Positions 14,318-54,457 of a stretch of DNA of 54,457 bases are shown here, in pieces; position 1 is the stretch's first letter; the number at the start of each line of letters is the position of its first letter. A model generated the notes under the pieces. The model had not been told where the DNA came from and made no database searches. It worked only from the letters and a program-made list of their open reading frames with translations. Position numbers and translations under genes: made by a program. Where the stretch lies: positions 1 through 54,457 of the forward strand of contig NIVC01004217.1 of assembly GCA_002269645.1 (NCBI GenBank), written 5' to 3'. This stretch comes from Macrostomum lignano (taxonomy: Eukaryota).

Positions 14318-14777
14318 TCCCTTCTACCTGAGCCTGCTCACATTTCTTAAGCACATAACACTAACAGTATAGCCTACACTAAAGTGTTGGCCTTGAATTA
14401 GAAAGTAAAATATGTAAGTTGGTTTTAAATATATAGAAGGTTAGATGCTATAAATACTAAAATTACTAAATAGTCTGATTTAAAAGCAATGATACTAAAA
14501 TTTTAAACTTCTGGTAAGACATAACCAAGGGTACCAAGGAAGTCGATTAATTTACTAGACCTAGATATCTATTTTTATTCTGGCAATGTGCAAAATGTCA
14601 TCTTGATTCATGAAAGCAGAACTATTGATTTACGGATGCCATGAAGTGGCATTGCTGCTTGCAACAACAATAGATGGTGAATTGATAAAAAGCGAACTGC
14701 CTGCCTAGACGTATCTGTTTCCCCATAGATATTCGTATTGATATTCAATTTCTAACAAAAGCAGCAAAATAAACTAA

Positions 14778-15465: not shown

Positions 15466-15807
15466 AATAATGAACAAGCTGTTGAAACCCGCGGAATTCC
15501 AATCCCCGGAACTATACTTTTGCTTGTATTCTAAGTCATAAGTCATACTCCAACAAAAACTTGTTAATGACTACGATAAAGGTAAAAATAAAATGGAGTA
15601 CATTCGTGTAAATTTAGGATTTGAGGAAAGCATTGATCTTCTTGGCTGGGGTGCTGCGCAGAACAGAATGTCAGGCAATGTCTGTCTAAAACAAGCATTG
15701 GCAAACTCTGGCCCCTGCCCCTGCCTTTCCCTACGTCCCTTGGATCCTTTGAAACTTCTATCTTCTCTACTGTTTCCCCTCTTATCTCTCGTCTCTCGTC
15801 TCTTCTC

Positions 15808-17248
15808 TCCAACCGAGCAATGCTAATGGATACGACAGGCGCCACTCGAGCCTTAGCGATGAGAAGATGAGCAGAAACATCCTGACGCTCATGATCGATA
15901 ACCCTCAGGTACACGACAGCAGCATATGCTCGTTCACTAGCGTCAGAAAAACCGTGCAATTGCATTTCAATGTGACTGGACTGTCATTGTTAAGGCACGA
16001 CACAACGGTAAAGTTTAAGATTCAACGTCTTGAGTGAATCCAAACAGCGGGTCCATTTTGCTGCCATCTCACTCGGAAGATCATCGTCCCACGGGACTTT
16101 CTGCTTGCAAAGCTGTTGAAACCAGGCTTTGACCAGCGTCACTGCCTGTGTTAGGAACCCAAGTGGGTCAAACAGCTTTGACAAAAGTGGAAGCATCATT
16201 CTCTTAGAGTACCACTGACCTGCGACGGAATCAAGCACTGCAGCGAACTCAGCCGAAAAATGTCTTCATCCGGGTATCAAGCAAGGCCAAGAACTTTCTT
16301 TATTTTACCGACATCCGCTACAGGAAGCGACTTTATGAAATCCGCATGAATGCCGCATGTTCATGCCTGCTTCCGCAAAAATTCGCCACTTCGTCTGAGC
16401 GTACAACTCGCCGGCTTCTTCATCCGAATCGCAACAAGTGACTAAATTGTCCACGTACAGGCTAGTCTTCAAGGTGTTTACAACTGCCGGAGCATCGTCT
16501 TGATGCAGTTCAGGGTGTCGCAATATGGTAGCTCGTAGAATCGCCGGTGAACAAGTTACGCTCGTAGGCCAAAAGGTACTCGACAGAATCTATAATGTAC
16601 GACTTTGTAGGGCTCGTCAGGCTTCATCTCTGTCCACAAGAACCGAAGAGCGTCTCGATCACGCCAGTCAATACCGATTTGAAGGAATGCTTTTTCAATT
16701 TCTGCGAGTACAGCTAAACCGACTTGAGGCGAAAGCGAAGAAGAATCTGGGGAATTAGTGGAAAACACGTAGGCCCCGTCAGAAGAAAGTTGTTGATAGA
16801 GAGGTCTGTGCTGTCCGTCTTTGCTGATCTGTCAAAAACCACGCGTAGCTTCGTGTATTCGCTATTCTTTTTCGTGACGCAGCTGTGGGGTAGATAATGA
16901 ATGATATTTGGCGACTGGTCGCTGCCGTCGACTGGAACTTTCTCGATGATGCCGGCTTGTTATTCTTCTTGTTCGGAAAGAATAGCATCACACTGCACTG
17001 CGCTAGCTGTGCTGGATTACGCTGAAGATGCCGAATGCTCGCCTTTAGCCGAGTTGCCGCTAAATCGAAATGGTCACGCAGGTTAATCGTCTTCTTGGAG
17101 AAACGCCAAGGCAACTGCACAGAATATCGTCCATCATGCAGCTGCGGGTTGCAAGGAAAGACGTCGGACGAAACAGGATGTGGGTCATCTAGAATCCCGA
17201 TTGAGTCCAACCTCCAAAGAGAAGTGAAATCGTCATTTAAGGACTTCG
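15808..17248 (-). mobile_element. Degenerate BEL/Pao LTR-retrotransposon pol fragment (RT and RNase H region)
   Basis: GRYSVQLPW; AEIEKAFLQI; HYRFCRVPFGL; LYVDN; LSKLFDPLGFL..VPWDD; LHGFSDASERAYAAVVY..LLIAKARVAP. Several frameshifts. Confidence 0.92.
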
Positions 17249-17249
17249 A

Positions 17250-18140
17250 CACAGTCTTCCTGACGACGATGACGGCTTTCTGCTGCGGCGACGCGTGGGT
17301 CGACATCAACCGGAGAAGCGGCTCAGCGTGCTTGGCTACGCCGACGACCTCGCCCTGCCGTCTTCGACCGTCGAGGGCGCCCAACGGCAGCTGGAAGGCT
17401 ATTTGCCGTTGCGGCGAGCGTCGGCCTGGTGGTCAACACGCAGAAGACCGTTGTGCTCTGCGTGCCGGACAACATCGAGGCTGCAATATTCTGCCGAGGC
17501 GCTGACGGGCAGGCGACCGAGCTCCCGCGATGTCAGCAGTTCGTCTACCTCGGCGGTCTGGTTCCAGACGCTCGCGAGGACCTGCGACGCCGCCGCGGGC
17601 TTGCCTGGGCTGCCTTTCGTTCTGTGAGGGCAGTCCTGCAGTCCGAGGCCCTACCGCGGACCGCCAGAGGGCGGCGCTGTTCCAGGCGGTAATCGAGACC
17701 GTCCTGCTCTACAACGCCGAGACTTGGACGCCGACGGATTCACTCGAACAGCAACTCGATGCGGCGCACGCTTAGCCTGCTGCGCGCCGCCTTCAACATC
17801 GGCGTCGAGCGAGTCAACAACGCGGCACTCTATCGCCGCGCTGGCCTGCCACGTCCAAGCGATCTACTGCGCCGTCGGCGACTCCAGCTCGCAGGCCATC
17901 TCATCCGCGCCGAGTCGTACTGCTCACAGCCGGTGCAGGAGGTGCTGCTGCTCACGCTGCAGGCACCCTACCGGCGAGGTCAAGCGCGAACTCAGCGTTA
18001 CGTCGACTGTCTGCTGGCTGACGCCGGCGCCCCGGACACTGCCGGTGGCGCGGCCTTTGTTCGCGCCCAAGCCATGAAGCGCGCCCTGTGACGCTGACTT
18101 TTGCCATCCTGACAGCGTATTTTGTTGTTGTTGTTGTTGT
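17250..18140 (+). mobile_element. 5'-truncated RTE-clade non-LTR retrotransposon with (TTG)n tail
   Basis: LGYADDLAL, FVYLGG, RRRGLAWAAF and LLYNAETWT across shifted frames. Stop at 18091, then a (ttg)n tail at ~18119-18140. Confidence 0.88.
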
Positions 18141-26699: not shown

Positions 26700-28075
26700 T
26701 CAGATCGTGTTGACCACCACGCCGACGCTCGCCGCAACGGCAACTAGCCTGTCCAGCTGGCGTTTAGCGCCCTCGACGGTCGAGGACAGCAGGGCGAGGT
26801 CGTCGGCGTAGCCAAGCACGCTGAGCCGCTTCTCCGGTTGACGTCGACCCACGCGTCGCCGCAGCAGAAAGCCGTCGTCGTCGGTGGTAAGAGCAGTCCG
26901 CAGCATCCAGTCAAGCACCAGGACGAACAGGAACGGCGCCAGCGTATCTCGCTGAAGCACTCTGGAGGATGTCTCAAACGAGTCCGATAGGACGTCCGGT
27001 TTTGTCACAGCAGCTGTCGTATCACGGTAAATCGCCATGATGGCGGAGATCAGCTGCTCAGGCAGGTTGTACGTGCGAGCACCATTGGAAGCACGGCTCT
27101 GACAACCGAGTCGAAAGCCTTCTTGAAATCAATAAAGATTAGAATCAGGATCGACTGGCGAATCCGCGCCTCCTCGATGACTCGGCGAAGAGCCAGGATC
27201 TGCGCCACTGTGCCGCGATGGGGCCAGAACCCGTTCTGCTCTGGGCGCAGGTACGGATCCAGCACGGGTTGCTACCGCGAAAGCAGCATCTGGTTGAATA
27301 GCTTCGCTGCACAGGACTGAAGGCAGATGCCTCGATGGTCTTCAAGCCTAGTGGTGCCCGGCTTCTTTGGAACAGCGACGATGTGCGCCGTGGTCCATTC
27401 GTTGGGCCTCACCGAAGAGCACGCGGTTCATCACTCTGGCGACCTCGATCAGCGGCCACAAGGGGATGCGCAGCGCCTCGATGGCACCTCGTCCGGACCC
27501 AGCGCTTTCCCGCCCGGTGACTGCTGGGCGAGCTTGACAACGTCGGCTGCGTTAACTGGGGCTACGCTGAAACTCTCCTCTGCCGGCAACGGCGTCTCCG
27601 GCGGCAGCGTCAGACTGTCTGGCAGCGGGGGTGGCGGCGCGTTGACGATGGCGGCGAAGAACTCGCGCAGCTCGTTCCTGCGCTCGTCCGGAGTGTCACC
27701 AGACAGGTTCAGCGGATTGCGCAGCTTTCGCCCCGTCAGAGCGTTGATGGCGGACCAGGCCACGCGCCCTCTGGCATCGGGCCCAGCGGCAGAGACAAGC
27801 CTGAATGGCGTCATCGACAGCCGCTTGTTGGCGCTGCACTGCAGGTAGACAGCCGCCAGTGCTGCCTCTGCCTCGCGGATTGGTCGCCTGCTCAAGCGGA
27901 GCCTCTCTAGATCTTCCCTCGCTGCCTGAATCGCGGGGTCATTCTGCCAGACCGGCTGCCCACGTTAAGCCAGTTGCATCATCGGGACTGCTTGCTCCGC
28001 GGCGGTTCTGACTGCAGCGCACACTTCCGCATACTTGGCACTTCCACGCAGCTTGTCGCCCAGCGCAGTGTTAAA
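26700..28075 (-). mobile_element. Internal fragment of the same RTE-clade family (RT N-terminal half through YADD), truncated at both ends
   Basis: LDPYLRPEQNGF..RGTVAQILALRRVIEE, FIDFKKAFDSV, QRDTLAPFLF, LGYADDLAL. It overlaps the 17250 copy by ~210 bp at high identity and is flanked on both sides by degenerate aatcccagatcc repeats. Confidence 0.9.
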
Positions 28076-39145: not shown

Positions 39146-39962
39146 TGAAAAAAGCCTCTGCGGTCTGACATCGGACCGGCCTCGGTTTGCCGATCCAGTC
39201 GGTAATTGAAATATGTAACTATATTTGCGTATCGTTTACTGACAGTAGTAATTTGAAACCTTATAGGAACGCAATTTTCTAAATTTCGGTACGCTTGTGA
39301 TGCGTAAAAAACATTACTGTTCCTTGTAATTAGCTGATCCAGAATATCTTTACAAGCATATAAAGTATAAATTTTAACTCAATTTAAGGTCGTTACAGCG
39401 TGGCCTGATCTATCAATACATGCGGTTTCTTTTTGAAAGTTGAAGTTAAATTTGTGGAAATTCAAAAACGATTACAAACCTAATTTATTTTAAAGAATAA
39501 TTATATGCCATGGACGTGACGTCATTGAGCTTCAAGAACATTAAAAAGAGTACAATTTAAAGAACAAACTGAAACAAGCAAGGATCTATAATGACACTTA
39601 CCTTCTGCGTTGACTCGAAAATAGACGCCTAAGTAGAAAGTGTAGAAAAAGTGAGAGTTGAATTAGAAAATTAGAAAGAAGTAAGAAAATTATTTAGTAA
39701 GAGAGTGTAGGAAGGAAACTGAGTTTCAGTTGCAAGTGTTTAGAGTTTAGACTGGAGACTGCAGACTGCAGAGTTAGAGTTCGACGAGCTTTCCAACCGG
39801 TTCAAATCGGTTTATACTGGACAGATTGCTTTGTCTGCTTTCTGGGAATTTTCCACTCCCCATTTTCCATTACTGTTGTTTACGGAAAGTGGGGGAAAGA
39901 AACTCCGTGCACTTAGAGGACAAGTGAGTTCGCATCTCCTCATCCAATGGCAGCTCGCTATT

Positions 39963-41062
39963 CTCTTCGGTGGCAGAGGAATAGAATAGAATAGAATAGA
40001 ATAGAATAGAATAGAATAGAATAGAATAGAATAGAATAGAATAGAATACAATAGAATAGAATACAATAGAATAGAATAGAATAGAATAGAATAGAATAGA
40101 ATACAATAGAATAGAATACAATAGAATAGAATATTCTTGGATACTGCACTGTCTAAGAAGAATTATTTATTCTTTTTTCTCTTTAGACTGTTATTTTTGG
40201 CTGCTAAGAAATTATTTTACCTCGCGTACTTCAGCCGCACTACTAAGTAGTGCAAAAAGGATATGAAAGGTAGAATCGTGTTTTATGCGCATAGCGAATG
40301 ACTTTGCGACTGTCAATACACATTACTGTACTGGTCACCAGAGGAAATGTGCTATAGCAAATTATCTATGCAACAAACATACTGCGCGAGAACACACTGC
40401 CCTTCCATGGGGGCGCTGTATTTGGGAGTGCTGTCTTTGGGTGGCGCTTGATCTCGCCACACTGATTTTGGGCGAGATTCTTACCGGCCCTCTGAGATCC
40501 GCCCTCTCTCCCCGGACTCACCCAGCAGCGCAAGCCGGTGGTGGGCAGCAGGAGGCCACCGGGCTGCAGAGGCCCCAAACCGGAGCCCCACAGAAGCTGC
40601 TGCTCTTCGGTGGCAGAGGAATAGAATAGAATAGAATAGAATAGAATAGAATAGAATAGAATACAATAGAATAGAATAGAATAGAATAGAATAGAATACA
40701 ATAGAATAGAATACAATAGAATAGAATATTCTTGGATACTGCACTGTCTAAGAAGAATTATTTATTCTTTTTTCTCTTTAGACTGTTATTTTTGGCTGCT
40801 AAGAAATTATTTTACCTCGCGTACTTCAGCCGCACTACTAAGTAGTGCAAAAAGGATATGAAAGGTAGAATCGTGTTTTATGCGCATAGCGAATGACTTT
40901 GCGACTGTCAATACACATTACTGGACTGGTCACCAGAGGAAATGTGCTATAGCAAATTATCTATGCAACAAACATACTGCGCGAGAACACACTGCCCTTC
41001 CATGGGGGCGCTGTATTTGGGAGTGCTGTCTTTGGGTGGCGCTTGATCTCGCCACACTGATC
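39963..41062. repeat. Direct duplication of a ~460-500-bp unit containing an (AATAG)n microsatellite, with a ~140-bp unique spacer
   Basis: ctcttcggtggcagagg(aatag)n...gatctcgccacactgat at 39963-~40465 and 40604-~41062. Confidence 0.9.
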
Positions 41063-41355
41063 CATTGGCACTGGAGTTATCGCAGCTATTCTTAACAAAA
41101 TAACTCAGGTTGAAAGAGATCTTGCAGAGTGGATCGCGAATAATATATATTTGCTACTTTTCCTCTGCAGTGCTTGAGGCTCTAGCTTAATCAGCTTTCC
41201 AGATATTCAATGGCGGAGATTCCGAAAAATTCTAATGTATTCAAATGGGGGAATTCGGGAAAATCAATCAGGAATTGCCAAGCTGTAGTAATAAACTCAG
41301 ATTTGAGATTCTACAGATCATTAGAGCGTGCCAGTCGGTGTCTTCCGCAGAATGA

Positions 41356-41485
41356 AGGTTCTTGGGTCAGGATAGGAGATTCTTGGGTGAGGCTATTCTT
41401 GGGTCAGCATGGAAGATTCTTGGGTCAGGATAGGAGATTCTTGGGTGAGGCTATTTTTGGGTCAGCATGGAAGATTCTTGGGTAC
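41356..41485. repeat. ~58-bp tandem repeat (internal ttcttgggt submotif), ~2.3 copies
   Basis: gaagattcttgggtcaggataggagattcttgggtgaggctattcttgggtcagcatg repeated. Confidence 0.8.
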
Positions 41486-42383: not shown

Positions 42384-43934
42384 TTAAATAATCGACGAAT
42401 TCAGCCGGAAATTCGGCTCCGAGTTCAGCTGCTGGTGACCAGACAGTGTGGCGTCGAATTCGCCCTCGTAATCTTCGTCATCGTTATCCACTTTGACATC
42501 AAGATCGAGGTCGTCCTCGGATTTCGGATCGGCGGAGGCCTGCAGGTTAGGGGTGGCGACCGAGTTTTTGAAAGGCCATTTGAGGACAGGGAGATGATGA
42601 TAAATGAGGTCATTCAAGGATGAGGAAATATATGCCATGAAAGGTCGATATTTAGAGACACGAACAGGGGTCGGGTCATTTAAGTGCACGGACAGGGGTC
42701 ATGTAGGACAAGACAAGGGGTTATTTAGGGACATGAGTATTGGTCATTTAAGGTCACAAACATCATGACGGTATCACATGTTTAGTTGCACGCATATAAA
42801 GTGGTGAGTCATACATTAACATGGGTTGATAAAATTTCCCAGCTCACCGATCGATTATAGCCTAGCCGGGAGTCGGTCTCGCCATCTCGACTATCGTCGT
42901 TGCCCCCAGCCAGCGATGCGGCTAAACAAGCGGCCACATCGAAGGCGGTTGTAGCGGCAGCAGCGTTAGCAGCAGTCCTACTACCCATAGTATTGCTGCC
43001 TAACACAGCAGCGCCGGTAGTATTCGCCAGTGGAAAATAAATTTTGCTAGCCACCACCGTCTGCTTCTGCTGCTGCTGCTGGCTGTCAGAGCCGGTCGCT
43101 CCCGATGCCGGGTATCGCCGACGGCCGGAACGGGCGCGCAGCTGCGGCTCCCCTGCACTCAGGCGTCTCTGCGCGAGAGATAAGAATAGGAAAGGGGTCA
43201 AATGAGGACAATAATTCTAAGCAGAGGTCATTTCAGGACAAAAGTCTACCCTGGGGTCAGTTGAGGACAAAAATCAACCCTGGGGTCAGTTGAGGACAAA
43301 AGTCTACCCAGGGGTCATTTGAGGACAGAATCTATCCGGAGGTCATTTGAGGACAAACTAATATACGTAAAGATCATTTGAGGGCAAACATCTACCGTGG
43401 GGTCATTGAAGACAGAGGTTATTTGGGGCAAAAAAAGTGCGCAGGGGTCAACTGTCCTTACCTGGCCAACAGTTGTGACGGCGGCGGCGGAGGCGGCGCA
43501 CCACCCCGTCGGAACAAGGCGGCAGCGTCAGCGCCTTTGACAGTCGCCGATTGGCCCGCCTGGGTCGGCCGCCGAGATCGCCAAGACTGGGCGACATGGA
43601 CGACGCCTGCTCCGTCGAAGACTGCTGCGGCAGAGTTGTTGTTAAAGAGTCGGTGGCCATCGACGCGGCAGCGGCGACGGCGGCTGCGGCCGTGGCGTCG
43701 AGTAGAGGCTGGTCCAAGACAACGGCTGCCGACAGCTGCTGGCGAGAGCAGACGGCTCGACTCGAAGGCTCTGCTGGCAGGCGCGGCAACAGCTGCGCCG
43801 AATGATGGAGCGCAGTTTAGCCGAACGATCGCGCTCCGCAAGGACCTGCAATTGCAGCTGCATGCGAAGATTGGTCAGGTCCATCTGGAGGTCGTCCACA
43901 CGATGCAGGCGTTTCTCGTAGTGCTGCCGAATCT
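42384..43934 (-). CDS. 3' exons of a DLK/LZK (MAP3K12/13, wallenda)-like kinase gene: second leucine zipper plus low-complexity tail (exons 43934-43462, 43168-42848, 42539-42384)
   Basis: EIRQHYEKRLHRVDDLQMDLTNLRMQL aligns by eye to the DLK/LZK zipper [27 protein letters not shown]. GT-AG sites are present, and the last two exons join in phase 0. The frame within the first exon is broken (TAA at 43642), so this part of the model is uncertain. Kinase exons are not in the window. Confidence 0.6.
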
Positions 43935-44288
43935 CTGGGGGCGAAAGAAATGACAAGAGACTGTTAGGCGGCAAACAAGGACACAGGACTTCTAGAGGTT
44001 AAAGGACACAAAAGGTCTCTTAGAGGTCGAATGAGAACACAGAACTATAAGGGTAAAATGAGGACACAGGACTGTTAGGGGTCAAATGAGGACACGGGAC
44101 TGTTGAGGGTCAATTGAGGACACGGAGCTGTTATGGGTCAAACTAGGACACGCGGGGACTGTTGTTGTGATAAGTTTTTGCATCATGTAGCAAACAGACC
44201 ATGGCACATTTGCACTAATGCACCATATCTAGACCAGCAGTATCTGAAATAGAAGCAAAAGCCATTTATAAGATAATATACATGTAGG

Positions 44289-44580
44289 TCAGTGAAGCAA
44301 ATATCTAAAATTGTTAACAGAACTATAAAAGAAAAATGAACAAGAAAAAATGGTGCTCAGTTAGCCGATTCTAAAAGTGAATCGTGGATCCCCTGAGCCA
44401 CGAAGAGGCCGAACACCGTTCAGGGGGTTAATCCATAGTTCACTTTGCAGAGCAAAACAAATTCCACAGCACAGTAAACAGTGCACAGCGGTCTTTTGCA
44501 GCATTGAACTAAGGATCAATCCCGCCACTAAGAGCGGGAAGCCACAGCAAGAAATGCAAAGCGGCCAGCTTTTTGAAAGC
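44289..44580. repeat. 292-bp direct repeat, copy 1 (3' of the SET gene)
   Basis: Matches 48269-48560 (offset 3980) with one substitution seen (aactata vs aagtata). Confidence 0.95.
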
Positions 44581-44648
44581 CGATAAAATCTTATAGCGAA
44601 CTCCCCATGCAACGGGGGCTTATGGTTTCAGAGAATAAACTTAGCCTT

Positions 44649-46687
44649 TCAGTCTTTAAGCCACGGATGCAGTCGAAGCACATCCGATCGCCTTTCTCCA
44701 TAATCGTAGAGTAGCTCCTCGCCTCGAGCAATGTCTCGAATGGCTTGGAAGACCAGATGCGGTTTATTGTTTACATCAGCAACAATCGGCTTCAAGTTAT
44801 TTCTTCGCCGGCTATGGTTAATGTACCGACCGACGTACTGGAAAGTGTTGGTTGCGTCGATGCAATAAGCTTGATCTCGCCAGGAAAAGAAAAACAAGAA
44901 GCAGCATGGCTTCCCTTGCTTTACAATATCTTCCTCCCGGGCGAGGCGTGCTTTTTGTCCTTGGATTAATTCTCCACCGTAAGTACAGACGACAGTGCCT
45001 TTTGGGAGGTCCGTACGGGCAAATGCCCCCAGACCCTCTGCGTCGACGCTACCGGCCTGAACCACGACGTTGCCGGTAGAAATCATTGTCTGTCGAACCA
45101 CATCGGCCATAGTGAGTTGCCTCATAGACGCCATTTCGGTCGGCAGGGATCGCTCTGGACTCCCACGGCTAGCTCGGCCGTGAGGCGTCACGTGAAGGAG
45201 CGGCGTGCATGCTCCGTCCGGAGTTGTGATAGTGTCCGGGACTAGACGCTCGCGATTAGCTGCCATTGCAGGAGGGGCAACCGCAGCAGCGTGGCTATTT
45301 GAGTCCTCAGACGAAGTCACAGTCGGCTCGAAAGGCGGATCATTGGACAGGCCATCTTTATTGGCTTCTCCTCTTTGGAGCCGAACGCTAAGGGGAACCT
45401 GACAATGAAGAAAATGAAGAGGACAAATGATTCATAGTGGTAACGGCATACAAATGCAGATTAACCCCAACGCTTTAATCTTTGCATTGAATAAACATGC
45501 AACAAAATTGTTCCTAAGAACACTGTTTCACACAATAAACTGTGGACTTCATTTAGTTTGACCAACTTACTTCATTGGAGGTCGCCGGTACAGCGTCGGT
45601 AGATAAGGCGACGTCTATAGTTGCAGCAGCGGCAGACTCCGGGACCAGAAGCTCGCGATTAGCTGCCATTGCAGGAGGGGCAACCGCAGCAGCGTGGCTA
45701 TTTGAGTCCTCAGGCGAAGTCACAGTCGGCTCGAAAGGCGGATCATTGGACAGGCCATCTTTATTGGCTTCTCCTCTTTGGAGCCGAACGCTAAGGGGAA
45801 CCTGACAGTGAAGAAAAAAGTACATCATAATGGTTACAACATGCAATTAAAGATGAACGTAACCCTTTGTTATTTTCATTAAACATACATGCAACCCAGC
45901 TGATGGTAAGATAATTGCTCTACACCATAAACCATGGGCCAGCATAAAAGACCCCACCCCTTGTTGTTAATCCCTAATATTTCCTTTTGAGCAAAGTATC
46001 TAAAAGCTTTTATTTATTCATTTTTCACTTTCATCTTCTCAAATTTACCAAACATTCAACTTTTTAAGAAAAGTTGCGACCTGACCTGACCCGCGACCTG
46101 ATGCTTTCAAGGTTACAGGCCGCAGCGTTTTAACAACAAAAAACCATGGACACAAATTTTAGTTTAACACACCTCATTGGAGGTCGCCATTTCAGCGTCG
46201 GTAGCTAAGTCCGCGTCCATTGTTATAGCGGCGGCAGATTCCGGCAGGCTTTCAAGCGGCAAGGCTGGATTAAGATTTAGTTGAGGCCGGATGCCGTAAA
46301 AGGCCAACAACCGCAGGCCCTCAATTCTGTCATATGCCCTTGCCCTCGCATCAGCTACGGCTGCACGGCCGACAACAAATGCTTCGCCGAAATGGCACAG
46401 CCGCATGTGTTGTCTCATATTAGAGGCGGCAAATGAGCTGCACAGCTGGCAAAGCTTTAAATCTCTTTTGCCATGCCAACGTTTGTAGAGAATGTAGGCT
46501 TCGACTCGATCGTAGTTTGCTGTATGCTTGCTTCGAGCGTGTCGAAGGAGGGTGGCGGACCGATTGGTGGAATAGTCACACATCGGGCAAATAAACTGGT
46601 CAGGGTCCATATTGAATTGATTCAAGTTTTCAACGTAAACGTTTAGAGTAAAATTTAGTTCTCGATAAAACGTGTCGCGCAAACTTT
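44649..46687 (-). CDS. C2H2 zinc-finger plus SET8/PR-Set7 (KMT5A)-like SET-domain protein; exons 46687-46172, 45801-45571, 45398-44649
   Basis: SET: GLGAFARTDLPKGTVVCTYGGELI..YCIDAT..GRYINHS..PHLVFQAIRDIARGEELLYDYGER..HPWLK, close to SET8 including its HPWLK end. ZnF: CPMC..HARSKH and CQLC..HMRLCH. Phase-0 GT-AG joins. The 5' start is not resolved. Confidence 0.88.
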
Positions 46688-46972
46688 CTGAAAATGAGGA
46701 AAAATCAAAATGAAACCTTTAACTACGGTGAAAGATGAATGAACTAGGCATCTTGGTAATAGGTACTTTACAATGCACTCTTAAAGACTGTCAGACTGAA
46801 AGCAAAGAAGGCATGTTCCGCTCGCTCGTAGTCTCAGGACAATAATAAAAGGCAGCTGAACAGATCAAATCAAATGTTTATTTGAAAGGTTGGGCGATAC
46901 AACGGACTTGATAACGCATTACAGTCCCGAATTTCTGCATAGTAGCATTAAGTTGCCAGTCACACTGAAGTT

Positions 46973-47590
46973 TTAAAGCAAATCGAGTAGTGAAACGGAA
47001 TTCGAAATTGTAGGATTTGCATTTTGTTGCAACGAAACGCTGGGAGAAGCTGGATTAAAAAAGCCATTGAAATCATTGTCTAACGTAGTTACACTACAAC
47101 TGTGGCAGGGGCATGTACAATGGCTATCAGGGCAATTGAAAATGTTTGAACGTAAAACACTTGGACCGGAGAGCTGTGAATCGGCACACTTTTCGGAGGG
47201 GTTCCTGGCGGCTAGTGATTGCAGCTTAGAAATTAAAACTTCAGCGTTTTCTTTAGCCTCGTCTAAGTTATAGGTAGATTGCGAATTTCCATTTGTCTTA
47301 GATTGCTTTCCATGTTTTACCCTAACATGGCTTGGTAAATTCGAAGTGATAACACTGCAAACAGGACACTGATAGAGGTAACCCGATTCGGTTCGCTTCT
47401 TTGCCTTTAAAAGTCCAAAAAGGCGGATTGTGGCATCAATTTGCTCTTCAGTGGCATCAGGGTGCTTTCGATTGCAATGTACCTTGAAACCAGATGCGCG
47501 TCCTGTCCAAGCATTGCAGATCAAACAGGAAATCTGCGTATGAACCTGCACCATGTGAGACATTGTCCCGCGGGTGACATTCAAGAGCAT
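46973..47590 (-). CDS. Two-C2H2 zinc-finger ORF (205 aa)
   Basis: CLIC...HCNRKH and CPVC...HVRVKH, followed by a Cys/His cluster CPDSHCTCPCHSC. Its linkage to the SET gene is unresolved. Confidence 0.65.
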   Translation of the reverse strand: MLLNVTRGTMSHMVQVHTQISCLICNAWTGRASGFKVHCNRKHPDATEEQIDATIRLFGLLKAKKRTESGYLYQCPVCSVITSNLPSHVRVKHGKQSKTNGNSQSTYNLDEAKENAEVLISKLQSLAARNPSEKCADSQLSGPSVLRSNIFNCPDSHCTCPCHSCSVTTLDNDFNGFFNPASPSVSLQQNANPTISNSVSLLDLL

Positions 47591-48268
47591 CGGGAAAACG
47601 TTGTGGGCTTATTATTATACTGCTTCCAGGGAGGTTAGGCAAATTAAGTCTTAATTTTTGTATTCTAAGACAATGACGGAGAGGAAATGCTTTAGAGTAT
47701 AAAAAATTCTGAATCTCACATCTGAATCTCCTATCCTCTGATCGGAACCAGGTCTATCTTCCAACATGAACATCCTTTCCTCTCAACTGAAACCCTCGAG
47801 TCCGAGTCAATAAGGCTACAGGCCAAGCAGGGTGCCATTAGTTAGTGTGGGCAGTTACATTTTCAATCTCCCCAGCCAAGCCTAAAGTGCTGCTATAAAT
47901 GGGATAATGAGTGCATGGCGGGATGGGTCACTGCTATTGCTTATGGTTAACACGTAACAAAAGTAAAAGACAAAAATGTGTATATCACGATTACTAGTTC
48001 CACTTTTATTATACTTTCGCGCTATCTTTGAAGCAGTATGCAAATATACTATTGGCATAGCGGGCGTCTAAACGCAGGCTAACATAAGAGAACTGACAAA
48101 TTGCAGTGAGTGTCAAAGTGTAGTACAACGAAAAGGGACAAAAGTAAGACGCATATGCGCCTCTCGCTGCAACGACAGGCGACTGCATATAAATGCATGA
48201 AATATTAAGTAATACAAACGAGAGAATAAAACACATTCAAGAAAGTTGCTCGTAGTTATAAATTTCAA

Positions 48269-48560
48269 TCAGTGAAGCAAATATCTAAAATTGTTAACAG
48301 AAGTATAAAAGAAAAATGAACAAGAAAAAATGGTGCTCAGTTAGCCGATTCTAAAAGTGAATCGTGGATCCCCTGAGCCACGAAGAGGCCGAACACCGTT
48401 CAGGGGGTTAATCCATAGTTCACTTTGCAGAGCAAAACAAATTCCACAGCACAGTAAACAGTGCACAGCGGTCTTTTGCAGCATTGAACTAAGGATCAAT
48501 CCCGCCACTAAGAGCGGGAAGCCACAGCAAGAAATGCAAAGCGGCCAGCTTTTTGAAAGC
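48269..48560. repeat. 292-bp direct repeat, copy 2 (3' of the KDZ gene)
   Basis: Near-identical to 44289-44580; starts ~105 bp after the KDZ stop codon. Confidence 0.95.
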
Positions 48561-48665
48561 TGAAATACTGCTTACTTTGGTAGGCTGTAAACTTTACAGT
48601 AAATTTCTAAGAGAAATCGGTATACGTTTATAAACTGGTTTAGAATTTCATGTAAACAAGCTAGT

Positions 48666-51526
48666 TTACATCCGAAATATGATTATCCTATGGATAACAG
48701 TTTCAAGTAATCGAGTTTCGGAATTAAATACTATCAATCCATTCTTCATCTGACTCAGACTGCTCACGACTTGATTCAACGTCTGAATGACTCGGGCTTC
48801 AACGTCATCTGGCTGATTTACGTTGGTACCAGCGTCGTTTGGATGCTGCGCATCAGCAGCAGCAGCTTCAATGCTTGCGTCAATGTGATCAAAGCGAAGA
48901 GCTTGAAGTTGCTTTAAAATAGTCTGAAAGAGGCATCGAAACTGGGCTGGCAATCCAGGTTGATGATGGAGTGTTTCACAGTGCTGTTCAAGTTTAATTT
49001 GAACGTCACGCCACTCTTGCACAATAATGATCTTTTCCTCCGCTAGACGATTCAGCTTGTGATACAAGTCAACCACCCGTCGCTTGAACCTCTCAGACAC
49101 ATCGATCGAAAGACCGAAGTAGAAGTCTGACTGGAAGTCGCGAAGCTGAATCATAGTGGGCACGCGAAGGCCTGGCGGAAGCGAGGCGGGCGCGCCATTC
49201 GAATGTCTGCATTTAAAGCCGCAACCTTGCGTAGAACATGCTCGATTTTCTTTTTGTCCATCTGAGCAGCCACTCTGACGGATCCAATAGAATCGTTCCA
49301 AAGCAAGTGCCTTAAGCTTTGCGTAAGGTTCCCTGCTCAATGGAGAGTCGCTATTGGGATTTATGGCTTCTGCATGCCATTGTTGAGCAAGATTTAAAAT
49401 GGCTACCTCAGAGATTGCAGGAATAGTTAATTTGTTGTTCCGCATCAAATCGCCAGCTTGTAGAAGCAATTGCTCCATTTCAGCTGAACAAGACGCGGCT
49501 GTGCGAGTTATTAGTTTTAATCGAGCAGAAAACCAATTGGAGGCGTACAACAACTGATTAGCATTGAAGCAATGCAAAATGTAAGACATACAAGCACTTC
49601 TGCGATCGGACCGCATGTACTTTAAGCTTTTACCAAACGGTCGTAGTGCAGACCAAGCGCGCTCCGTATTCTCCCGTCGCAAAGACCCGCTCCAGGAGTT
49701 ACCCGCACGGAGTACTTTAGTTGGCATTGTCTCTCGGCCCAGCACATGAAAGGCGTTCACAGCGCACGTGACACTGTTAAGCTGTACACCAGATGCTGAC
49801 ACCATGGACTTGACACGATTGGAAATGCGACAACCTGATTTTAGGAAAAAGTTTTAAATGAATAAATAATTGAGCTTCGTGTCGCAGTACGCATGCACGT
49901 ACATAAGTAAGCACAAGCATAAGTAAGCACACACTATAAGTGTATAGTGTAAATAAGTGCAGCATGATAGAAACACGATAAAAATCAACTCACCAACATC
50001 ATAGATAAAAATGAGATCCTTTGAGACGGGCTGTGTCATTAGGTAATGACGAAGAGTCTGTTCTGGATAGCACAGGCCCTCACCAGCTGTAATAATGTTG
50101 CAACCTGTCAGAAGCCTGTTATGCCGGCAAAATAAGCCAAAGAAACCGTTGACATCGTGCTTGCTGGCCCTGATCACGGGTTTTTCTGTTCCAGCCTTCC
50201 AGTTAGTGCAGCCTTCTGCAGACACTTGTGTCGTAGGAGGCGGTACAGTTGCTGGTTCTACATGAATAAGCGGTGACGGCAATGAGCGTTCAGAATCTGG
50301 CACTAGACGTTGCTTCGAACCCATACTTTGTAGTCTTCGCCATCCAAATAGAGCATCAGCACAAACTACAGACTTCCGACTTGAATTTTGGTCAGGACAC
50401 AAAAGACAACTAGCAGGCCAGCTTGCTGAACACCTCTGCAACTCTCGAAACCGCAGTAGGACTCCATTACGCTGCAATCTCTGATACACTCGATCGGCTA
50501 AACCAGGGTTCCAGCGACCTTGTCCTACGACGGAGCCTTTGAAAAGACAGGTAATTGCACGAGACAGTGGCAGTTGACCGTCAAAGCACAAGGAGTCAAG
50601 AGTTGATAGAAAGCTAATTGAAAAAAATGTTAACAATTCGCCAACGCGTGACTCGCTTCCAGGAAAGTATCCTTTTGCTAGCATGGCATCAACTTTATCA
50701 CAGGATTGGCACGTATAAATTCTGGCGCAAACAATTCCGTTGATGTCAATAATCTGAATTTCGGATGATGTTGTAAACTCAGAAGACAAGCTTGATTCGC
50801 TACAGCAGAATAGAGAGACAGGCTCTTCTTCTTGAATGTCTTCAAACATTAGCGATTGAGCCTAGGAAAAAGGGTTAAATTTTGTATGCGGTGTTATAAA
50901 AATATTATTCCGTACTAAGGCTATTAGCATTCTAAATACTTTTGTTTCACGTCAAATTTAATACAGCGTTATACTGCCAAATAGGCGTCATTGTTTTCTT
51001 CACAGTAAACTAATATCCTTAGAAATTGCAATTTAGATTTTAAAACAACTTACATTCCACTGGAGGAACTTGTGAGCAGCAAAATTTCCATGCGTTATCT
51101 TTTTACAATCACTGCAGACATCGTACTGACAATGAACGCATCGGAAAACTCCAGGCTGCATGTCGCAACGAACACAGCATTTTAACTCGAATGACTGTTT
51201 ATAACCGGCAGTGTAACTTTCCACAATGGCCGTGTAGTCTTCCCATTCCGTGAATTTAGGCGGCTGTTCAAACTTATTACTAATCTGTTCAGGCATAGAG
51301 TCATGGTTTCCTGCACCCAGATCTTGTGAAAGACTGCCGCCAGTGACTGTGGAACACGAGGAAGCCGTGGCAATCGATGTAGTACTTTCCAATGCATTGC
51401 ATTAGACGTTCGCAATATCCTTGGCCTTCCGCGTTGGCCAGTCATCAGTACTACTTCAGATTGTCTTTTCTCGATTTCGCATTTAGTTTTCTTGACGAAA
51501 TCATTGCTGAAATTCGTGAGGATCAT
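48666..51526 (-). CDS. KDZ (Kyakuja-Dileera-Zisupton) transposase gene with AT-hook-like, B-box-like and CxC cysteine clusters; exons 51526-51054, 50861-49994, 49834-48666; contains frame lesions
   Basis: GRPR; CVRC..FRCVHC..CSDC..H..H..WN; IIDINGI..C..C..GYFP; CLLCP..CADALFG; GFFGLFCRH..GE..YP; YDVG|C spliced across intron 2; FH..G(H)..CQLKYS..GAG..DGE..ERAWS recovered through two compensating shifts. Splice phases 0 and 1 match. Confidence 0.85.
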
Positions 51527-54349
51527 TCTGAATTGTATATTACATCATATGCTAAGCTCAAAAGGTGTTTATCTATATCAGTGTCTTTTTAGAGCAGGTG
51601 CTTAGCCATCTGCTCAGCCACCTGCAAGGCAACCTGCTCAGGCATTGCAGCTCAGGCAGTGGCTGGCTTGGAGCATCAGCTGATTTGATTAAAGTTGATT
51701 AAAATCTAGCAGATTTATAGTCTATAATTTGTTATCCATAGCCATATTGCATTGAGTTGTGTTTATAAGTATATAATAAGCAGCTTAAATTATTATTTGG
51801 TGTAATTGGGATGCTTTGGAATATGTTTTCTAAATTTTCCACTTCATCTTGTATTCTTGATTGTTGTATTTTCTTACAAGTCTTTTCTGGGTCCTTATGT
51901 CTATGAAAAAGGGTAGGCCTACCTGCATATAGTGGCTCTTTGATTTTAATTTATAAATTTTAGATGTATACATTTTTTGTTTTAATAGTTGCAGTTTAAT
52001 GAGCCACAACACAAATGCCCACAAAGTTTTTATCAGTTTTATTTTATTTGGAATATTCCAATAAATTATAATATATAAATATATATTATTTATCCTAACA
52101 AAAAGAATTCTATATGAATATTATATTTACATATTTATAGTCACAGAATCATGCACTGAAAAAGTTCTTCTTAGGCTTGATAACAATATAGAAACAATAG
52201 AAACTAATAGATAAAAGTCTTAAATAACATTTATCATTTTTGATATTCTGTTTTTTAATTTGACTAAGAACATCTAAAGAAATCATACTTTTTTATTAGA
52301 ATATTTAAACTTATTTAAAGGCAACAAAGGTACAAAAGAATAGGCAGCCTTATGGTCATAACATTATGGTTTTAACTTTTTTCTGTCAATTCACTAACTT
52401 TGAATTACCAATAGATTAAAAATTTAATAGATTATATGGCCATTAATGTTTATATCTAATTATGCAAATACTATATAATTTTATCTATAGTTTGTTTCAA
52501 TCTTCCAAAGCTTTTTATTTGTTTTCAAAAGGTACACAAAGTTAATGATGTCTTTTGCTAAAAAAATGTCCAATTTTTTATAAAAATAGCTTTTTGCCAA
52601 CTGATATTATACTAATCCAACATTTTACCATTCATTTTTGGCATTTGTTATTTGTCCAATGACTGGACAAATAGCCTTTTTGCTATTTGTCTGCTTAAAT
52701 TGCTAACACAAGTATCTGTTTGTTTTATGATGAATATTCTAAATTTTTAAGACCTTTTCTTGTATATTAATTAATATTTTCTTATACTATGTTAGCAAAG
52801 CAATGTATTCAATTGGCATAATTTTGTATATAAGACACACTAGTATAACAACATAATAAACTAATAATCAAGATACAAATAAGAAGTCTTTAAAGTCTAG
52901 GAATATTTATCCTTGTAGTTTCTATGAAATAGATTTTTTAGCATTATTAATTTAATTGGACAAATAACAAAATGTCTATTTGTCCAGTATTAACTAGATG
53001 AATAGAAAGCATGGTCATAATCCAGTAACTGCGACAAATAACAATTGCCTTTATTTTTAGATTGTATGCTAGTATAGGCTTATATTATACATAAAGAACA
53101 TTTGGCAGAAAAATTAGCTAGCAAGGCAATGGTGAGCAAAATATTGACTTTTTACTATTTTCCAAATATGTCTATCTTATCTGGCTGGAATGAGCCACCT
53201 GACATAGGCCCTACTCACTATATATTCCACTCTTGACTCCAAGGTGCATATAGGAAAACATTATTTAAGTGTAAGGTGTGCGGTGAAAAATACAAAGTGG
53301 GACTGTAGCCTAAGAGCAATGCTGTTACCTAGCTATTTAAGAAGTAGTACTTCAACCAACCTGCTGTCTAGCAACAAATGAGATCTACTGTCACTGACAT
53401 ATGACAAGCATATCTAGGTCCCTAGGATGCTTAAAATTCTTAATACTCTGGTCACAGTTGCTGTGTCACTGTCACAGATTCATCAGTTAATTCATCACAA
53501 ATAAGCCCTCAAATCTCTAGAAGGTATTCATTTGAAGTAGCCAGGATCACCATATTATTTTTTGTTATTGGCCCTTGCTCTATGCACTGGCCTACAAACT
53601 TGAAGGTCTATATTATATTATTACACAATCTAAATATACTAAATCTCTAAGGTTTGTTGTATGCTTGAATGAATGTCCATAATGCTCTAGTTGTATAACT
53701 AAATTCATGCAAATATATATCTAGATTTGAAAGGCCTTCTCGTCTCAATTTCAGCACAAAAAGTGCCAGGAATCAGGTCGACAGGTCATTCGCAAGTCAG
53801 TTTCATCACATACTACTATTGTATCAATATTTACACAAACTACACGTCACAATTTACACAATGATGTATGACAAAAAATTACATATATTACAAACTACAC
53901 GTCACAATTTACACAAATATTTACACAATAATTAATATATTACAAAAAAGCTATGCGATTAGCGAATACGTGGCTACACACACATCAGCCATAGCTTTTA
54001 TGATAGCTAGAAGAAAAAATTATTGCCGATGTAACGCATCAGCTATGGTAAACAAAGAAACACTAGAACTAATGACGCAGCGCGAGAAAAATCTGTTTTA
54101 GATTGCGGCTGTTAGTTTGTTCACATAAGATAGGCATATTAAGTATTATTAAAATAAAATGCAAATACAATAAATAAACGTATTTTTTTCTCCTAAAACA
54201 GAACCCACCGAGGCATTAGTTTTTTTTATCAATAAATTATTACATTTGTTATACTACAGAATAAATTTCCGTCGGTCTAAGCCAAGTGTAATAACTAGCG
54301 CAACGATCCCTAAATCATCGCTAGTGACGCTTGGAACCCCAAATCAACT

Positions 54350-54457
54350 CAAGAAGGCCCAAACCAGCCCTAGGAAGCTCAAAACTAGCCCTGGAAAGCT
54401 CAAACTAGCGCCTGGAAAGCTCAAATTGGCGCGCGGAAAGCTCGAATTGGCGCCGGA
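54350..54457. repeat. ~21-bp degenerate tandem repeat running off the window end
   Basis: ggaagctcaaaactagccct-like units. Confidence 0.75.

What the first reader, a model, noticed from the sequence alone, without database searches (positions are those of the whole stretch)
44289..51526. Candidate new composite transposon: KDZ transposase plus zinc-finger/SET8-like histone methyltransferase cargo
Seen: same-strand tandem genes, KDZ transposase, then repeat R, then C2H2 ORF, then C2H2-SET gene, then repeat R again. Known: KDZ-superfamily transposons (Zisupton in animals; Kyakuja/Dileera in fungi) are multi-exon, and the fungal ones are linked to TET/JBP DNA-modifying genes; SET8/PR-Set7 is the H4K20 monomethyltransferase. 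Inference: an animal KDZ element carrying a histone writer with its own sequence-specific DNA-binding fingers. It could mark its own copies or target sites with H4K20me1 to evade silencing or alter replication timing. I do not know of this pairing having been described, but I cannot search the literature.
Basis: partly seen in the sequence, partly recalled or inferred. Interest (0 to 1): 0.9.

Follow-up and report, generated by a model that had tools for sequence, protein, structure and literature searches.

The report
Flatworm KDZ transposon carrying SET8-like methyltransferase
A jumping-gene family in the flatworm Macrostomum lignano carries, next to its KDZ transposase gene, two zinc-finger genes, one fused to a SET8-like histone methyltransferase; this pairing did not turn up in the literature I searched, but it follows a known pattern of transposons carrying chromatin enzymes.

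Summary
On the minus strand the window has a three-exon KDZ transposase gene, a 292-bp repeat R, a zinc-finger ORF (ZnF1), a spliced ZnF2-SET gene, and R again.

The window is a whole contig of the Macrostomum lignano Mlig_3_7 assembly. At least 8 other contigs carry the same unit at 98.6-99.8% identity.

A second family, whose KDZ is only 45% identical, carries the same trio of KDZ, ZnF2-SET and ZnF1, so the linkage is old and not chance. The SET domain is KMT5A-like (38% identical to human, catalytic motifs intact). It is multi-copy and fused to a zinc-finger module, so it is not the host KMT5A.

Five copies of the sister family share one exact left edge (CAGTTTATGG...) against five unrelated flanks. 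That marks a real dispersed element.

The "composite transposon" reading is wrong. R is internal, and the repeated unit is about 17 kb with tandem arrays at both ends. The sister family has an unrelated repeat R' after each of its three genes, and one copy has lost exactly the SET cassette by R'xR' recombination.

The right end, TSD and enzyme activity are not established. The window's own KDZ copy is frameshifted; sister copies are intact.

Verdict: a new variant of a known kind.

The parts
54333..54457 (-). Last units of the subterminal tandem array (20-bp unit GGCGCCAATTTGAGCTTTCC, higher-order repeat of about 158 bp). The contig ends inside the array. In L002 the array runs 1.7 kb further, preceded by a 250-bp leader and the left edge of the repeated unit.
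51505..54332 (-). AT-rich spacer (about 29% GC) between the array and the KDZ gene. It contains a MITE-like inverted repeat at 52662-52706 / 52944-52988. In other copies this spacer has taken nested insertions (L004 at window-equivalent 52840, L007 at 53458).
48666..51504 (-). KDZ transposase gene, with exons at 51504-51054 (AT-hook-like RGRPR motif and B-box-like Cys cluster), 50861-49994 (weak CxC1 hit and N-terminal half of KDZ) and 49834-48666 (C-terminal half of KDZ and a coiled tail). In this window copy the frame is broken in exons A and C. The copy in L007 is an intact 831-aa ORF.
48269..48560 (-). Repeat R, copy 1, starting 105 nt after the KDZ stop codon.
46973..47590 (-). ZnF1 gene (205 aa, single exon). 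It holds a module of about 100 aa with two C2H2-like fingers, paralogous to the N-terminus of ZnF2-SET. It is 100% conserved in five other copies, and the sister family has a 31%-identical homologue. An AATAAA lies about 95 nt downstream.
44649..46682 (-). ZnF2-SET gene (PAA48172.1/P0028, at least 486 aa). Exon 1 (46682-46170) is the two-finger module, exon 2 (about 45798-45568) is a linker, and exon 3 (about 45395-44649) is a linker plus the KMT5A-like SET domain ending HPWLKD. A polypyrimidine-AG acceptor lies at 46686.
45235..45817 (-). Internal 180-bp duplication (45235-45414 = 45638-45817, 98% identical) that created linker exon 2 as a copy of the start of exon 3.
44289..44580 (-). Repeat R, copy 2, starting 68 nt after the SET stop codon. 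It differs from copy 1 by one private substitution at 44323.
42387..44151 (-). Downstream part of the shared unit: 28-bp repeats (43959-44151), an ORF at 43974-43642, 29-bp repeats (43194-43357), and a two-exon gene for a 98-aa acidic protein (42988-42387, P0025, Mlig004599g28). None has a Pfam hit.
39563..41483 (-). Right-hand tandem arrays: 58-bp repeats at 41354-41483 and 595-bp repeats containing (GAATA)n at about 39979-41061 (2 copies here, about 10 in L016). A tail of about 420 bp follows. Homology with L009 ends at 39563 (...TTTCAGTTTGTT), which is the provisional right edge.

Best explanation
The locus is one copy of a low-copy, roughly 17-kb KDZ-superfamily DNA element of Macrostomum lignano. 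The window's copy has a frameshifted transposase gene.

Read on the minus strand, the element has these parts in order:
- a sharp left terminus beginning 5'-CAG, lying outside the window;
- a leader and a 20-bp-unit tandem array;
- an AT-rich spacer;
- the KDZ transposase gene;
- R;
- ZnF1;
- ZnF2-SET;
- R;
- a small acidic-protein gene;
- further tandem arrays.

Shown:
- the gene order;
- conservation of the order in two deeply diverged families;
- intact transposase and SET motifs in sister copies;
- identical left edges against unrelated flanks;
- variable presence of the SET cassette.

Inferred:
- The transposase moves the whole unit.
- The genes are co-transcribed as one trans-spliced transcriptional unit.
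- R (and R' in the sister family) is a shared 3'/intergenic module. Because it is a direct repeat, it also makes the cargo cassette removable by homologous recombination.
- The ZnF module, present once alone and once fused to SET, targets the methyltransferase. The target may be the element's own arrays, where a KMT5A-like enzyme would methylate lysine (most likely H4K20me1) to shape the element's chromatin. This would parallel the fungal KDZ elements that carry TET/JBP.
For: Identity of the source:
- KDZ hits are all M. lignano. The window is the 54,457-bp contig that carries PAA48173.1 and PAA48172.1.

Linkage:
- L001 (KDZ 45% identical) has KDZ at 10001-12512, ZnF2-SET at 13235-14233 and ZnF1 at 15185-16057 on one strand.
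- ZnF2 is 38% identical (E=7e-19), SET 35% and ZnF1 31% between the families.
- Both SETs best match KMT5A in the PDB over the whole domain and C-flank. The GxG, YxG, NHS and ELLYDYG motifs are kept.

Copies:
- KDZ at more than 90% identity is on at least 9 contigs, and ZnF-SET on at least 8.
- ZnF1 and ZnF2 are 100% and SET 99.6% conserved in five other copies.
- L007 has an intact 831-aa KDZ ORF. The residues I take as the candidate catalytic D/D/E and the H-H-C motif are invariant across the three families.

Mobility:
- Five sister-family copies share the exact edge CAGTTTATGGCC with five unrelated flanks.
- L002 and L004 share the edge CAGAGCATATTCC with different flanks.
- The window and L009 have different right flanks.

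Cassette:
- L012 lacks exactly the R'-to-R' interval holding ZnF2-SET and keeps ZnF1.

Co-transcription:
- Genes g25, g27 and g28 share the transcriptional-unit prefix Mlig004599. The annotation paper defines that prefix as a cluster of transcriptional units, which are often trans-spliced polycistronic precursors (PMC5730564).

Precedent:
- KDZ elements carry TET/JBP in fungi, and SET genes are carried by Phytophthora HarbingerS and MuDR families (PMC12730594).
Against: - No right terminus, TIR or TSD could be defined.
- The window-family copies are 98.6-99.8% identical over at least 14 kb. The assembly is known to be redundant, with 180-312 Mb duplicated, so most of these copies may be homeologues or haplotypes rather than transpositions.
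- Leader and array are 92-95% and about 80% identical between two families whose coding DNA is about 60% identical. The sharp left edge could therefore belong to an array-bearing unit with its own history.
- The third KDZ family (L003) has an array but no ZnF or SET within 10 kb.
- The CxC1 hit is below threshold.
- No relative of this KDZ-SET pairing was found outside M. lignano.
- The SET tree does not resolve the two element SETs as sisters: 4/100 bootstraps.
- Neither DNA binding by the fingers nor the enzyme's substrate is tested.
Confidence: 0.7

Rival explanations
1. This is a domesticated, no longer mobile host gene cluster: a transposase-derived gene with ZnF and SET partners, transcribed as an operon-like unit. 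Its many copies come from the hidden polyploidy, extra chromosomes and assembly redundancy of the DV1 line.
For: - Copies are near-identical over at least 14 kb, including far-flanking arrays.
- Assembly redundancy is documented.
- No TIR or TSD was found.
- The genes were kept in the 'coregenes' annotation, which excludes repeat-overlapping transcripts.
- The cargo ORFs are perfectly conserved between copies.
Against: - Five identical left edges lie against five unrelated flanks in the sister family, one of them 240 bp from a PDZ-domain gene.
- There are two different left flanks and two different right flanks in the window family.
- Three families 31-48% identical coexist in one genome.
- The SET cassette is present in some copies and absent in another.
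Confidence: 0.15
2. The mobile unit is the array-bearing leader element. It is a separate repeat that sits upstream of, or is targeted by, KDZ loci. The KDZ-ZnF-SET genes are passengers or neighbours, not the machinery that moves it.
For: - Leader and array are far more similar between families (92-95% and about 80%) than the genes are (about 60% at the DNA level).
- The sharp edges that were found are edges of the leader.
Against: - The array lies 2.7-2.8 kb upstream of the KDZ start codon in both families and in every copy seen. A third family has its own different 20-bp array in the same position.
- No array copy without a KDZ gene was seen in the roughly 250 kb sampled.
- Flanks change only outside the whole block.
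Confidence: 0.08
3. R-cargo-R is an independent mobile cassette that landed beside a KDZ gene. It could be an LTR-like retroelement, or a composite unit bounded by two copies of a small mobile repeat.
For: - The two direct repeats are 292 bp, 99.7-100% identical and 3,980 bp apart, with sharp edges.
- R folds more stably than shuffled sequence, z=-4.3.
Against: - The interval has no RT, integrase or other transposase.
- The cargo gene has two sense-strand introns.
- There is no TSD and no TG..CA ends.
- R occurs nowhere else in the window or in the unrelated loci.
- The sister family has three R' copies, one after each gene including the transposase. The first of them overlaps the KDZ stop codon.
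Confidence: 0.05
4. The SET gene is simply the host KMT5A, or an ordinary paralogue, lying next to a transposon by chance.
For: The best matches of the SET domain are canonical KMT5A/SET8/set-1 proteins of Hydra, Pocillopora, Bulinus, Trichinella and human.
Against: - It is only 37-47% identical to those proteins.
- Its N-terminus is a zinc-finger module shared with the neighbouring ZnF1 gene.
- It is present on at least 8 contigs, always beside KDZ.
- The same arrangement occurs in a family with 45%-identical KDZ.
Confidence: 0.02

Closest known systems
Fungal KDZ (Kyakuja, Dileera, Zisupton) transposons that carry TET/JBP dioxygenase genes (Iyer et al. 2014; PMC12730594)
   Same: - The transposase superfamily is the same (Pfam KDZ).
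- The transposase gene is multi-exon.
- A chromatin- or DNA-modifying enzyme gene is carried beside the transposase.
- The left terminus begins 5'-CA, as in Kyakuja, and no TIR was found, also as in Kyakuja.
   Different: - The host is an animal (flatworm).
- The cargo is a histone-type SET lysine methyltransferase plus zinc-finger genes, not a DNA dioxygenase.
- There are large subterminal tandem arrays.
- Each gene is followed by the same internal repeat.
- The TSD and right end are not determined here.
Phytophthora HarbingerS and MuDR families with captured SET histone methyltransferase genes (cited in PMC12730594)
   Same: A cut-and-paste DNA transposon carries a SET-domain methyltransferase gene.
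   Different: - The transposase superfamily and the host kingdom differ.
- I could not see what type of SET those elements carry.
- Here the SET is KMT5A-like and fused to a two-finger module that is also encoded separately.
Host KMT5A / SET8 / PR-Set7 (H4K20 monomethyltransferase)
   Same: - The SET fold is matched end to end, including the C-terminal HPWLK flank.
- The GxG, YxG, NHS and ELLYDYG motifs are conserved.
   Different: - It is about 38% identical to the human domain.
- It is multi-copy and transposon-linked.
- Its N-terminal region is a C2H2-like module, not the KMT5A regulatory region.
- Its substrate is untested.
Zisupton of Xiphophorus (Bohne et al. 2012)
   Same: It is an animal KDZ-superfamily element with a multi-exon transposase and cysteine-cluster domains.
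   Different: - Zisupton has TIRs and 8-bp TSDs (PMC12730594); neither was found here.
- By my recollection Zisupton carries a SUMO-protease-type domain rather than SET.
- The two proteins were not compared directly.
SETMAR (primate SET gene fused to a mariner transposase)
   Same: A SET methyltransferase and a transposase are physically linked.
   Different: SETMAR is a single host gene that captured an immobile transposase. Here the genes are separate, inside a multi-copy element, and the SET belongs to another subfamily.
Bacterial-type composite transposon
   Same: Cargo lies between two copies of a repeat.
   Different: R is a 292-bp non-coding direct repeat inside a larger unit. It is not a pair of insertion sequences that supply ends and transposase.

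Membership tests
KDZ (Kyakuja-Dileera-Zisupton) transposase superfamily | KDZ transposase domain (Pfam PF18758) above the curated threshold | tested here: met
   The spliced window protein scores 73.3 bits against a cut-off of 26.6, E=2.9e-20, covering profile positions 4-212 of 217. The precomputed PF18758 annotation is present on P0016-P0019.
KDZ (Kyakuja-Dileera-Zisupton) transposase superfamily | Associated CxC cysteine-cluster domain N-terminal to the transposase core | tested here: inconclusive
   CxC1 scores 15-17 bits, below the 26.9 cut-off. UniRef names one sister-family member a 'CxC2 domain-containing protein'. A B-box-like Cys cluster gives only weak hits.
KDZ (Kyakuja-Dileera-Zisupton) transposase superfamily | Intact reading frame with conserved acidic and H-H-C residues of the core | tested here: met
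   This is met in sister copies. L007 has an 831-aa ORF, and D321, D440, E497, H471, H475 and C479 are invariant in three families. It is not met in the window's own copy, which has frameshifts.
KDZ (Kyakuja-Dileera-Zisupton) transposase superfamily | Discrete termini shared by copies at different genomic sites | tested here: inconclusive
   The left edge is met: five identical edges with unrelated flanks in the sister family and two in the window family. The right edge is only provisional, at window 39563.
KDZ (Kyakuja-Dileera-Zisupton) transposase superfamily | TSD of 7 bp (Kyakuja) or 8 bp (Zisupton, Dileera); TIRs in Zisupton, or CA..TG ends without TIRs in Kyakuja (PMC12730594) | tested here: inconclusive
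   No copy was obtained with both flanks, so the TSD could not be read. There is no inverted match of the left end in 54 kb of window or in the other loci. Both families start 5'-CAG. The similarity between the L002 left flank and the L009 right flank is at background level.
KMT5A / SET8 / PR-Set7 family of SET methyltransferases | SET domain closest to KMT5A over its full length, including the C-flank | tested here: met
   The top 14 PDB hits are all KMT5A/SETD8, E=6e-27, query 88-222 against chain 27-159, ending HPWLK. The sister-family SET gives the same result at E=4e-13. The nearest named proteins in the representative library are KMT5A/set-1.
KMT5A / SET8 / PR-Set7 family of SET methyltransferases | Cofactor and catalytic motifs (GxG, YxG, NHS, ELxYDY) present | tested here: met
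   These were read directly from the alignments. The window has EGLGAF, TYGGE, INHS and ELLYDYG. The sister family has KGYGLF, FYGGA, INHS and ELLYDYG.
KMT5A / SET8 / PR-Set7 family of SET methyltransferases | Orthology to the host gene (single locus, KMT5A-type N-terminal region) | tested here: not met
   It is on at least 8 contigs. Its N-terminus is a two-finger module paralogous to ZnF1. It is 37-47% identical to canonical orthologues, and the tree is unresolved. The host's own KMT5A could not be identified with these tools.
KMT5A / SET8 / PR-Set7 family of SET methyltransferases | H4K20 monomethylation activity | not testable with these tools
   This needs an enzyme assay.
Composite transposon (cargo between two mobile repeats) | The flanking repeats are themselves elements or ends used by the transposase, and they bound the mobile unit | tested here: not met
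   Homology among copies continues far outside both R copies. R has no real ORF, no TIR and no other copies. The sister family has three internal R' copies.
LTR retrotransposon (R as LTR) | RT/integrase genes between LTRs, TSD, and an intron-less sense-strand interior | tested here: not met
   There are no such domains. The cargo has two sense-strand introns. There is no TSD.
Transposons carrying chromatin or DNA modifiers (KDZ with TET/JBP; HarbingerS or MuDR with SET) | The modifier gene lies beside the transposase, inside the repeated unit, in several copies and lineages | tested here: met
   This holds in two families and at least 11 loci. One copy is missing the cassette.

The most novel reading that the evidence does not exclude
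An animal DNA transposon encodes its own targeted histone writer. The ZnF module, alone and fused to a SET8-like enzyme, would recognise the element's conserved 20-bp arrays or its R repeats. It would lay down H4K20 methylation there to control the element's chromatin, replication or silencing. The cargo genes would be organised as recombination-exchangeable cassettes, each ending in the same repeat.
Probability: 0.15. Interest if true: 0.85.

Novelty: new variant of a known kind. Interest (0 to 1): 0.62.

Why it matters
Transposons that carry enzymes acting on chromatin are known mainly from fungi (KDZ with TET/JBP) and oomycetes (SET genes in Harbinger and MuDR families). An animal example would add two things.

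- **A new pairing.** The cargo is a KMT5A-like histone methyltransferase together with a matching pair of zinc-finger modules. This extends the pattern to Metazoa and to a different histone-modifying activity.
- **An experimentally tractable host.** Macrostomum lignano has transgenesis, RNAi and regeneration assays, so one could test whether a mobile element manipulates histone marks.

The locus also shows direct repeats making a cargo gene gainable or losable within a transposon family.

For annotators, it is a caution. 'KMT5A-like' genes in invertebrate genomes may be element cargo rather than host paralogues.

Tried and rejected
1. A word-indexed homologue search with the 223-aa SET ORF returned only bacterial SET proteins and missed the M. 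lignano proteins that contain it. I judged this a tool limitation.
2. A profile search with three KDZ proteins found nothing outside M. lignano except two weak fungal hits.
3. R as a tRNA-derived SINE or known RNA: ARAGORN found none and Rfam found nothing relevant. R and R' show no sequence similarity, score 16 against a shuffled mean of 14 +/- 2.
4. TIR search: the left-end 200 bp has no inverted partner in any locus or in the window.
5. TSD: I fetched the L002 contig further (L016), but its 595-bp array is about 10 copies long, and the locus ended 59 bp into a nested insertion. Flank-to-flank alignments were at background level.
6. The tail-to-tail 'palindrome' of L012 and L001 on one scaffold is unreliable, because an N gap lies at its centre.
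7. An NJ tree of 61 SET domains was unresolved. A first attempt timed out.
8. The nearest non-flatworm SET (P0041) led to a giant-virus-like contig, not to a KDZ element. Other near hits are unnamed metagenomic fragments.
9. The AlphaFold2 model of the ZnF module had a mean pLDDT of 47, so no fold search was run.
10. Literature searches for KDZ or Zisupton with SET, and for KMT5A with transposon, found no description of this pairing.

Full report
**What is in the window.** Everything in the finding lies on the minus strand.

- *KDZ gene.* Translating 52600-48560 shows three in-frame exons joined by GT-AG introns: 51504/51389-51054, 50861-49994 and 49834-48666. The spliced protein hits Pfam KDZ (PF18758) at E=2.9e-20, 73 bits against a cut-off of 26.6. 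It also gives a sub-threshold CxC1 hit and weak B-box hits.
- *R.* Downstream lies a 292-bp repeat R (48560-48269). Its second copy (44580-44289) is direct, differs by one base and has sharp edges.
- *ZnF1.* Between the R copies is a 205-aa ORF (47590-46973).
- *ZnF2-SET.* Also between the R copies is a three-exon gene (about 46682-46170, 45798-45568, 45395-44649). Its product equals the annotated protein PAA48172.1.
- *SET domain.* It is well above the Pfam threshold (E=3e-20). Its 14 best solved-structure matches are all human KMT5A/SET8 (E=6e-27) and run to the C-terminal HPWLK. It is 38% identical to the human domain.

In intact copies the start corresponds to 51504.

**Source and copies.** The KDZ protein finds only Macrostomum lignano proteins. 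Cluster look-ups show that the window is an entire 54,457-bp contig of assembly GCA_002269645.1 (Mlig_3_7). Its KDZ gene is annotated as Mlig004599g25, its ZnF-SET gene as g27 and a downstream 98-aa gene as g28. KDZ genes more than 90% identical lie on at least 9 contigs, and the ZnF-SET gene on at least 8.

I fetched seven further loci of this family (L002, L004-L009, L016). All match the window at 98.6-99.8% from the contig end at 54457 down to about 39563.

The window differs from them mostly by indels, with 103 gap positions against 29 substitutions. These break the KDZ frame in exon A (-1 in an A run, -4) and in exon C. L007 carries an uninterrupted 831-aa KDZ ORF. The window's transposase copy is therefore either decayed or poorly polished, but the family is intact. 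ZnF1 and ZnF2 are 100% and SET 99.6% identical in five other copies.

**The linkage is old.** P0018, a KDZ protein 45-48% identical, lies on another contig (L001). Directly downstream on the same strand are a ZnF2-SET gene (13235-14233, 300 aa) and then a ZnF1 homologue (15185-16057).

Identities between the families are 38% for the ZnF2 module (E=7e-19), 35% for SET and 31% for ZnF1. The second SET also matches KMT5A best and keeps the GxG, YxG, NHS and ELLYDYG motifs and the PWL C-flank. A third M. lignano paralogue of the ZnF2-linker region is 76% identical (P0037). A third KDZ family (P0019, 31% identical, L003) has no ZnF or SET within 10 kb.

ZnF1 and the N-terminus of ZnF2-SET are paralogous modules of about 100 aa. 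Each has two spaced C2H2-like fingers and a basic helix (E=3e-4 to 3e-6 across comparisons). Each family thus encodes the module twice, once alone and once fused to SET.

**Not the host KMT5A.** An exhaustive search of 1.84 billion representatives gave only five hits below 1e-30. Three were the M. lignano paralogues. The other two were multi-SET proteins from a seadragon and a sea cucumber. Everything else is a continuum of canonical KMT5A/set-1 orthologues (Hydra, Pocillopora, Bulinus, Trichinella) and short metagenomic SET proteins at 34-49% identity. An NJ tree is unresolved. One close hit lies on a giant-virus-like contig. I could not identify the host's own KMT5A. Even so, the copy number, the fused finger module and the two-family linkage exclude simple orthology.

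**Is it mobile, and where are its ends?**

*Upstream arrays.* Upstream of the KDZ gene every family has a tandem array of 20-bp units. In the window family and the L001 family the unit is GGCGCCAATTTGAGCTTTCC, the arrays are 1.4 to more than 6.8 kb long, and they end 2.7-2.8 kb before the start codon. L003 has a different 20-bp unit in the same place. The window ends inside this array.

*Left edge.* A 250-bp leader precedes the array. In the L001 family five copies (L001, L012, L013, L015, L017) begin at exactly the same base, CAGTTTATGGCCGCC, and five unrelated sequences precede it. One of those lies 240 bp from a PDZ-domain gene. In the window family L002 and L004 share the edge CAGAGCATATTCC with different upstream sequence. 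Identical breakpoints against unrelated flanks mark insertion of a discrete element rather than segmental duplication.

*Right side.* The window and L009 diverge at window 39563, after 58-bp and 595-bp tandem arrays. L008 and L016 carry a nested insertion a little earlier.

*What is missing.* No inverted copy of the left end exists anywhere, and no copy gave both flanks. TIR and TSD therefore remain open. Kyakuja elements are reported to have CA..TG ends, no TIRs and 7-bp TSDs; Zisupton elements have TIRs and 8-bp TSDs (PMC12730594).

*A puzzle.* Leader and array are 92-95% and about 80% identical between families whose coding DNA is about 60% identical.

**What R is.** R is internal to the roughly 17-kb unit, not an end. 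In L002 the two R copies are identical.

The L001 family has its own repeat R', unrelated in sequence to R. R' follows all three genes:
- 12466-13061, overlapping the KDZ stop codon;
- 14299-14909, 96% identical overall, with the first 553 bp identical;
- 16186-16445.

Copy L012 lacks exactly the interval from R' to R' that holds ZnF2-SET. It keeps one R' followed by ZnF1, and there is no gap in the sequence. The direct repeats therefore make the SET cassette removable by homologous recombination. In principle they could also make it insertable.

The shared name prefix of the KDZ, ZnF-SET and 98-aa genes denotes one cluster of transcriptional units. The annotation paper states that such units are often trans-spliced polycistronic precursors (PMC5730564). 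A polypyrimidine-AG acceptor lies just before ZnF2, and an AATAAA follows ZnF1. I infer that R and R' are shared 3'/intergenic modules of such a unit. This is an inference, not a demonstration. R RNA folds better than shuffled sequence (z=-4.3), but it matches no tRNA or Rfam family.

**Comparison with what is known.** KDZ elements carrying TET/JBP dioxygenases are established in fungi. SET genes carried by Harbinger- and MuDR-type elements are cited for Phytophthora (PMC12730594). F-box associations with Zisupton domains are known in fish (PMC12062965). Six full-text searches found no description of a KDZ element with a SET or KMT5A-like gene, nor of this element in M. lignano. I therefore rate it a new variant of a known kind: a known transposase superfamily and a known strategy, with new cargo, a new host group and an unusual cassette-with-repeat layout.

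**Verdict.** The core inference, a KDZ element with a zinc-finger/SET8-like cargo, is supported by comparative evidence. The 'composite transposon' structure is rejected. Self-marking with H4K20me1 is untested. The main weaknesses are the undefined right end and TSD, the redundancy of the assembly, and the absence of relatives outside this species.

Noticed in passing
window 255-6298 (-): Helitron coding region: a 1603-aa ORF with Helitron_like_N (7e-30) and DUF6570, followed by a 433-aa PIF1-helicase ORF. The split looks like a frameshift.
   Followed up: partly
window 11357-13428 (-); L007:1971-3709: A FLYWCH+MULE transposase ORF (495 aa) has a PHD-finger ORF upstream. A related PHD+MULE pair is inserted in the AT-rich spacer of another KDZ copy, L007.
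   Followed up: partly
L001:871-7319, L002:5460-7162, L003:6436-9910, window 54333-54457: All three KDZ families have a kilobase-scale array of 20-bp units upstream of the transposase gene. Two families share the unit and a 250-bp leader at far higher identity than their genes. The third has a different unit.
   Followed up: partly
L012:12469-13021 versus L001:12466-14909: One sister-family copy has lost exactly the ZnF2-SET cassette by recombination between the R' repeats.
   Followed up: yes
L001:12781 region (R'); window R 44289-44580: R' contains the 14-nt palindrome CAGTTTATAAACTG. Half of it equals the first 8 nt of that family's left terminus. R contains, on the other strand, the first 7 nt (CAGAGCA) of the window family's left edge. 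This was seen post hoc and is statistically weak.
   Followed up: no
L011 (Logan SRR33465455 contig, 51 kb): A 138-aa SET8-like protein, 46% identical to the window SET, lies among densely packed small intronless genes that include Evr1_Alr and HARE-HTH. The contig looks like a giant virus.
   Followed up: no
P0038 (Phyllopteryx taeniolatus, 4152 aa); P0039 (Holothuria leucospilota, 799 aa): These predicted proteins consist of several tandem SET8-like domains. They may reflect tandem arrays of KMT5A-like genes in other animals.
   Followed up: no
L004:5329-8660; L008:14520-15649 and L016:21945 onward: Nested insertions distinguish copies: 3.3 kb at window-equivalent 52840, and about 1.1-1.3 kb at window-equivalent 39762.
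   Followed up: partly
window 17255-17395 and 26752-26892: A 141-nt inverted repeat, 92% complementary, with arms 9.4 kb apart. These may be the ends of another element.
   Followed up: no
window 49676-49737 and 49186-49236: The frameshifting indels in KDZ exon C compensate each other (-2 and -1; +1, +1 and +1). A long ORF therefore persists, although the conserved H-H-C segment is read out of frame.
   Followed up: partly
NIVC01001431.1 (L012 + L001): Two sister-family copies lie tail to tail around 387-bp satellite arrays, but an N gap sits at the centre. L013 has no Ns and also shows the satellite followed by an inverted satellite.
   Followed up: partly
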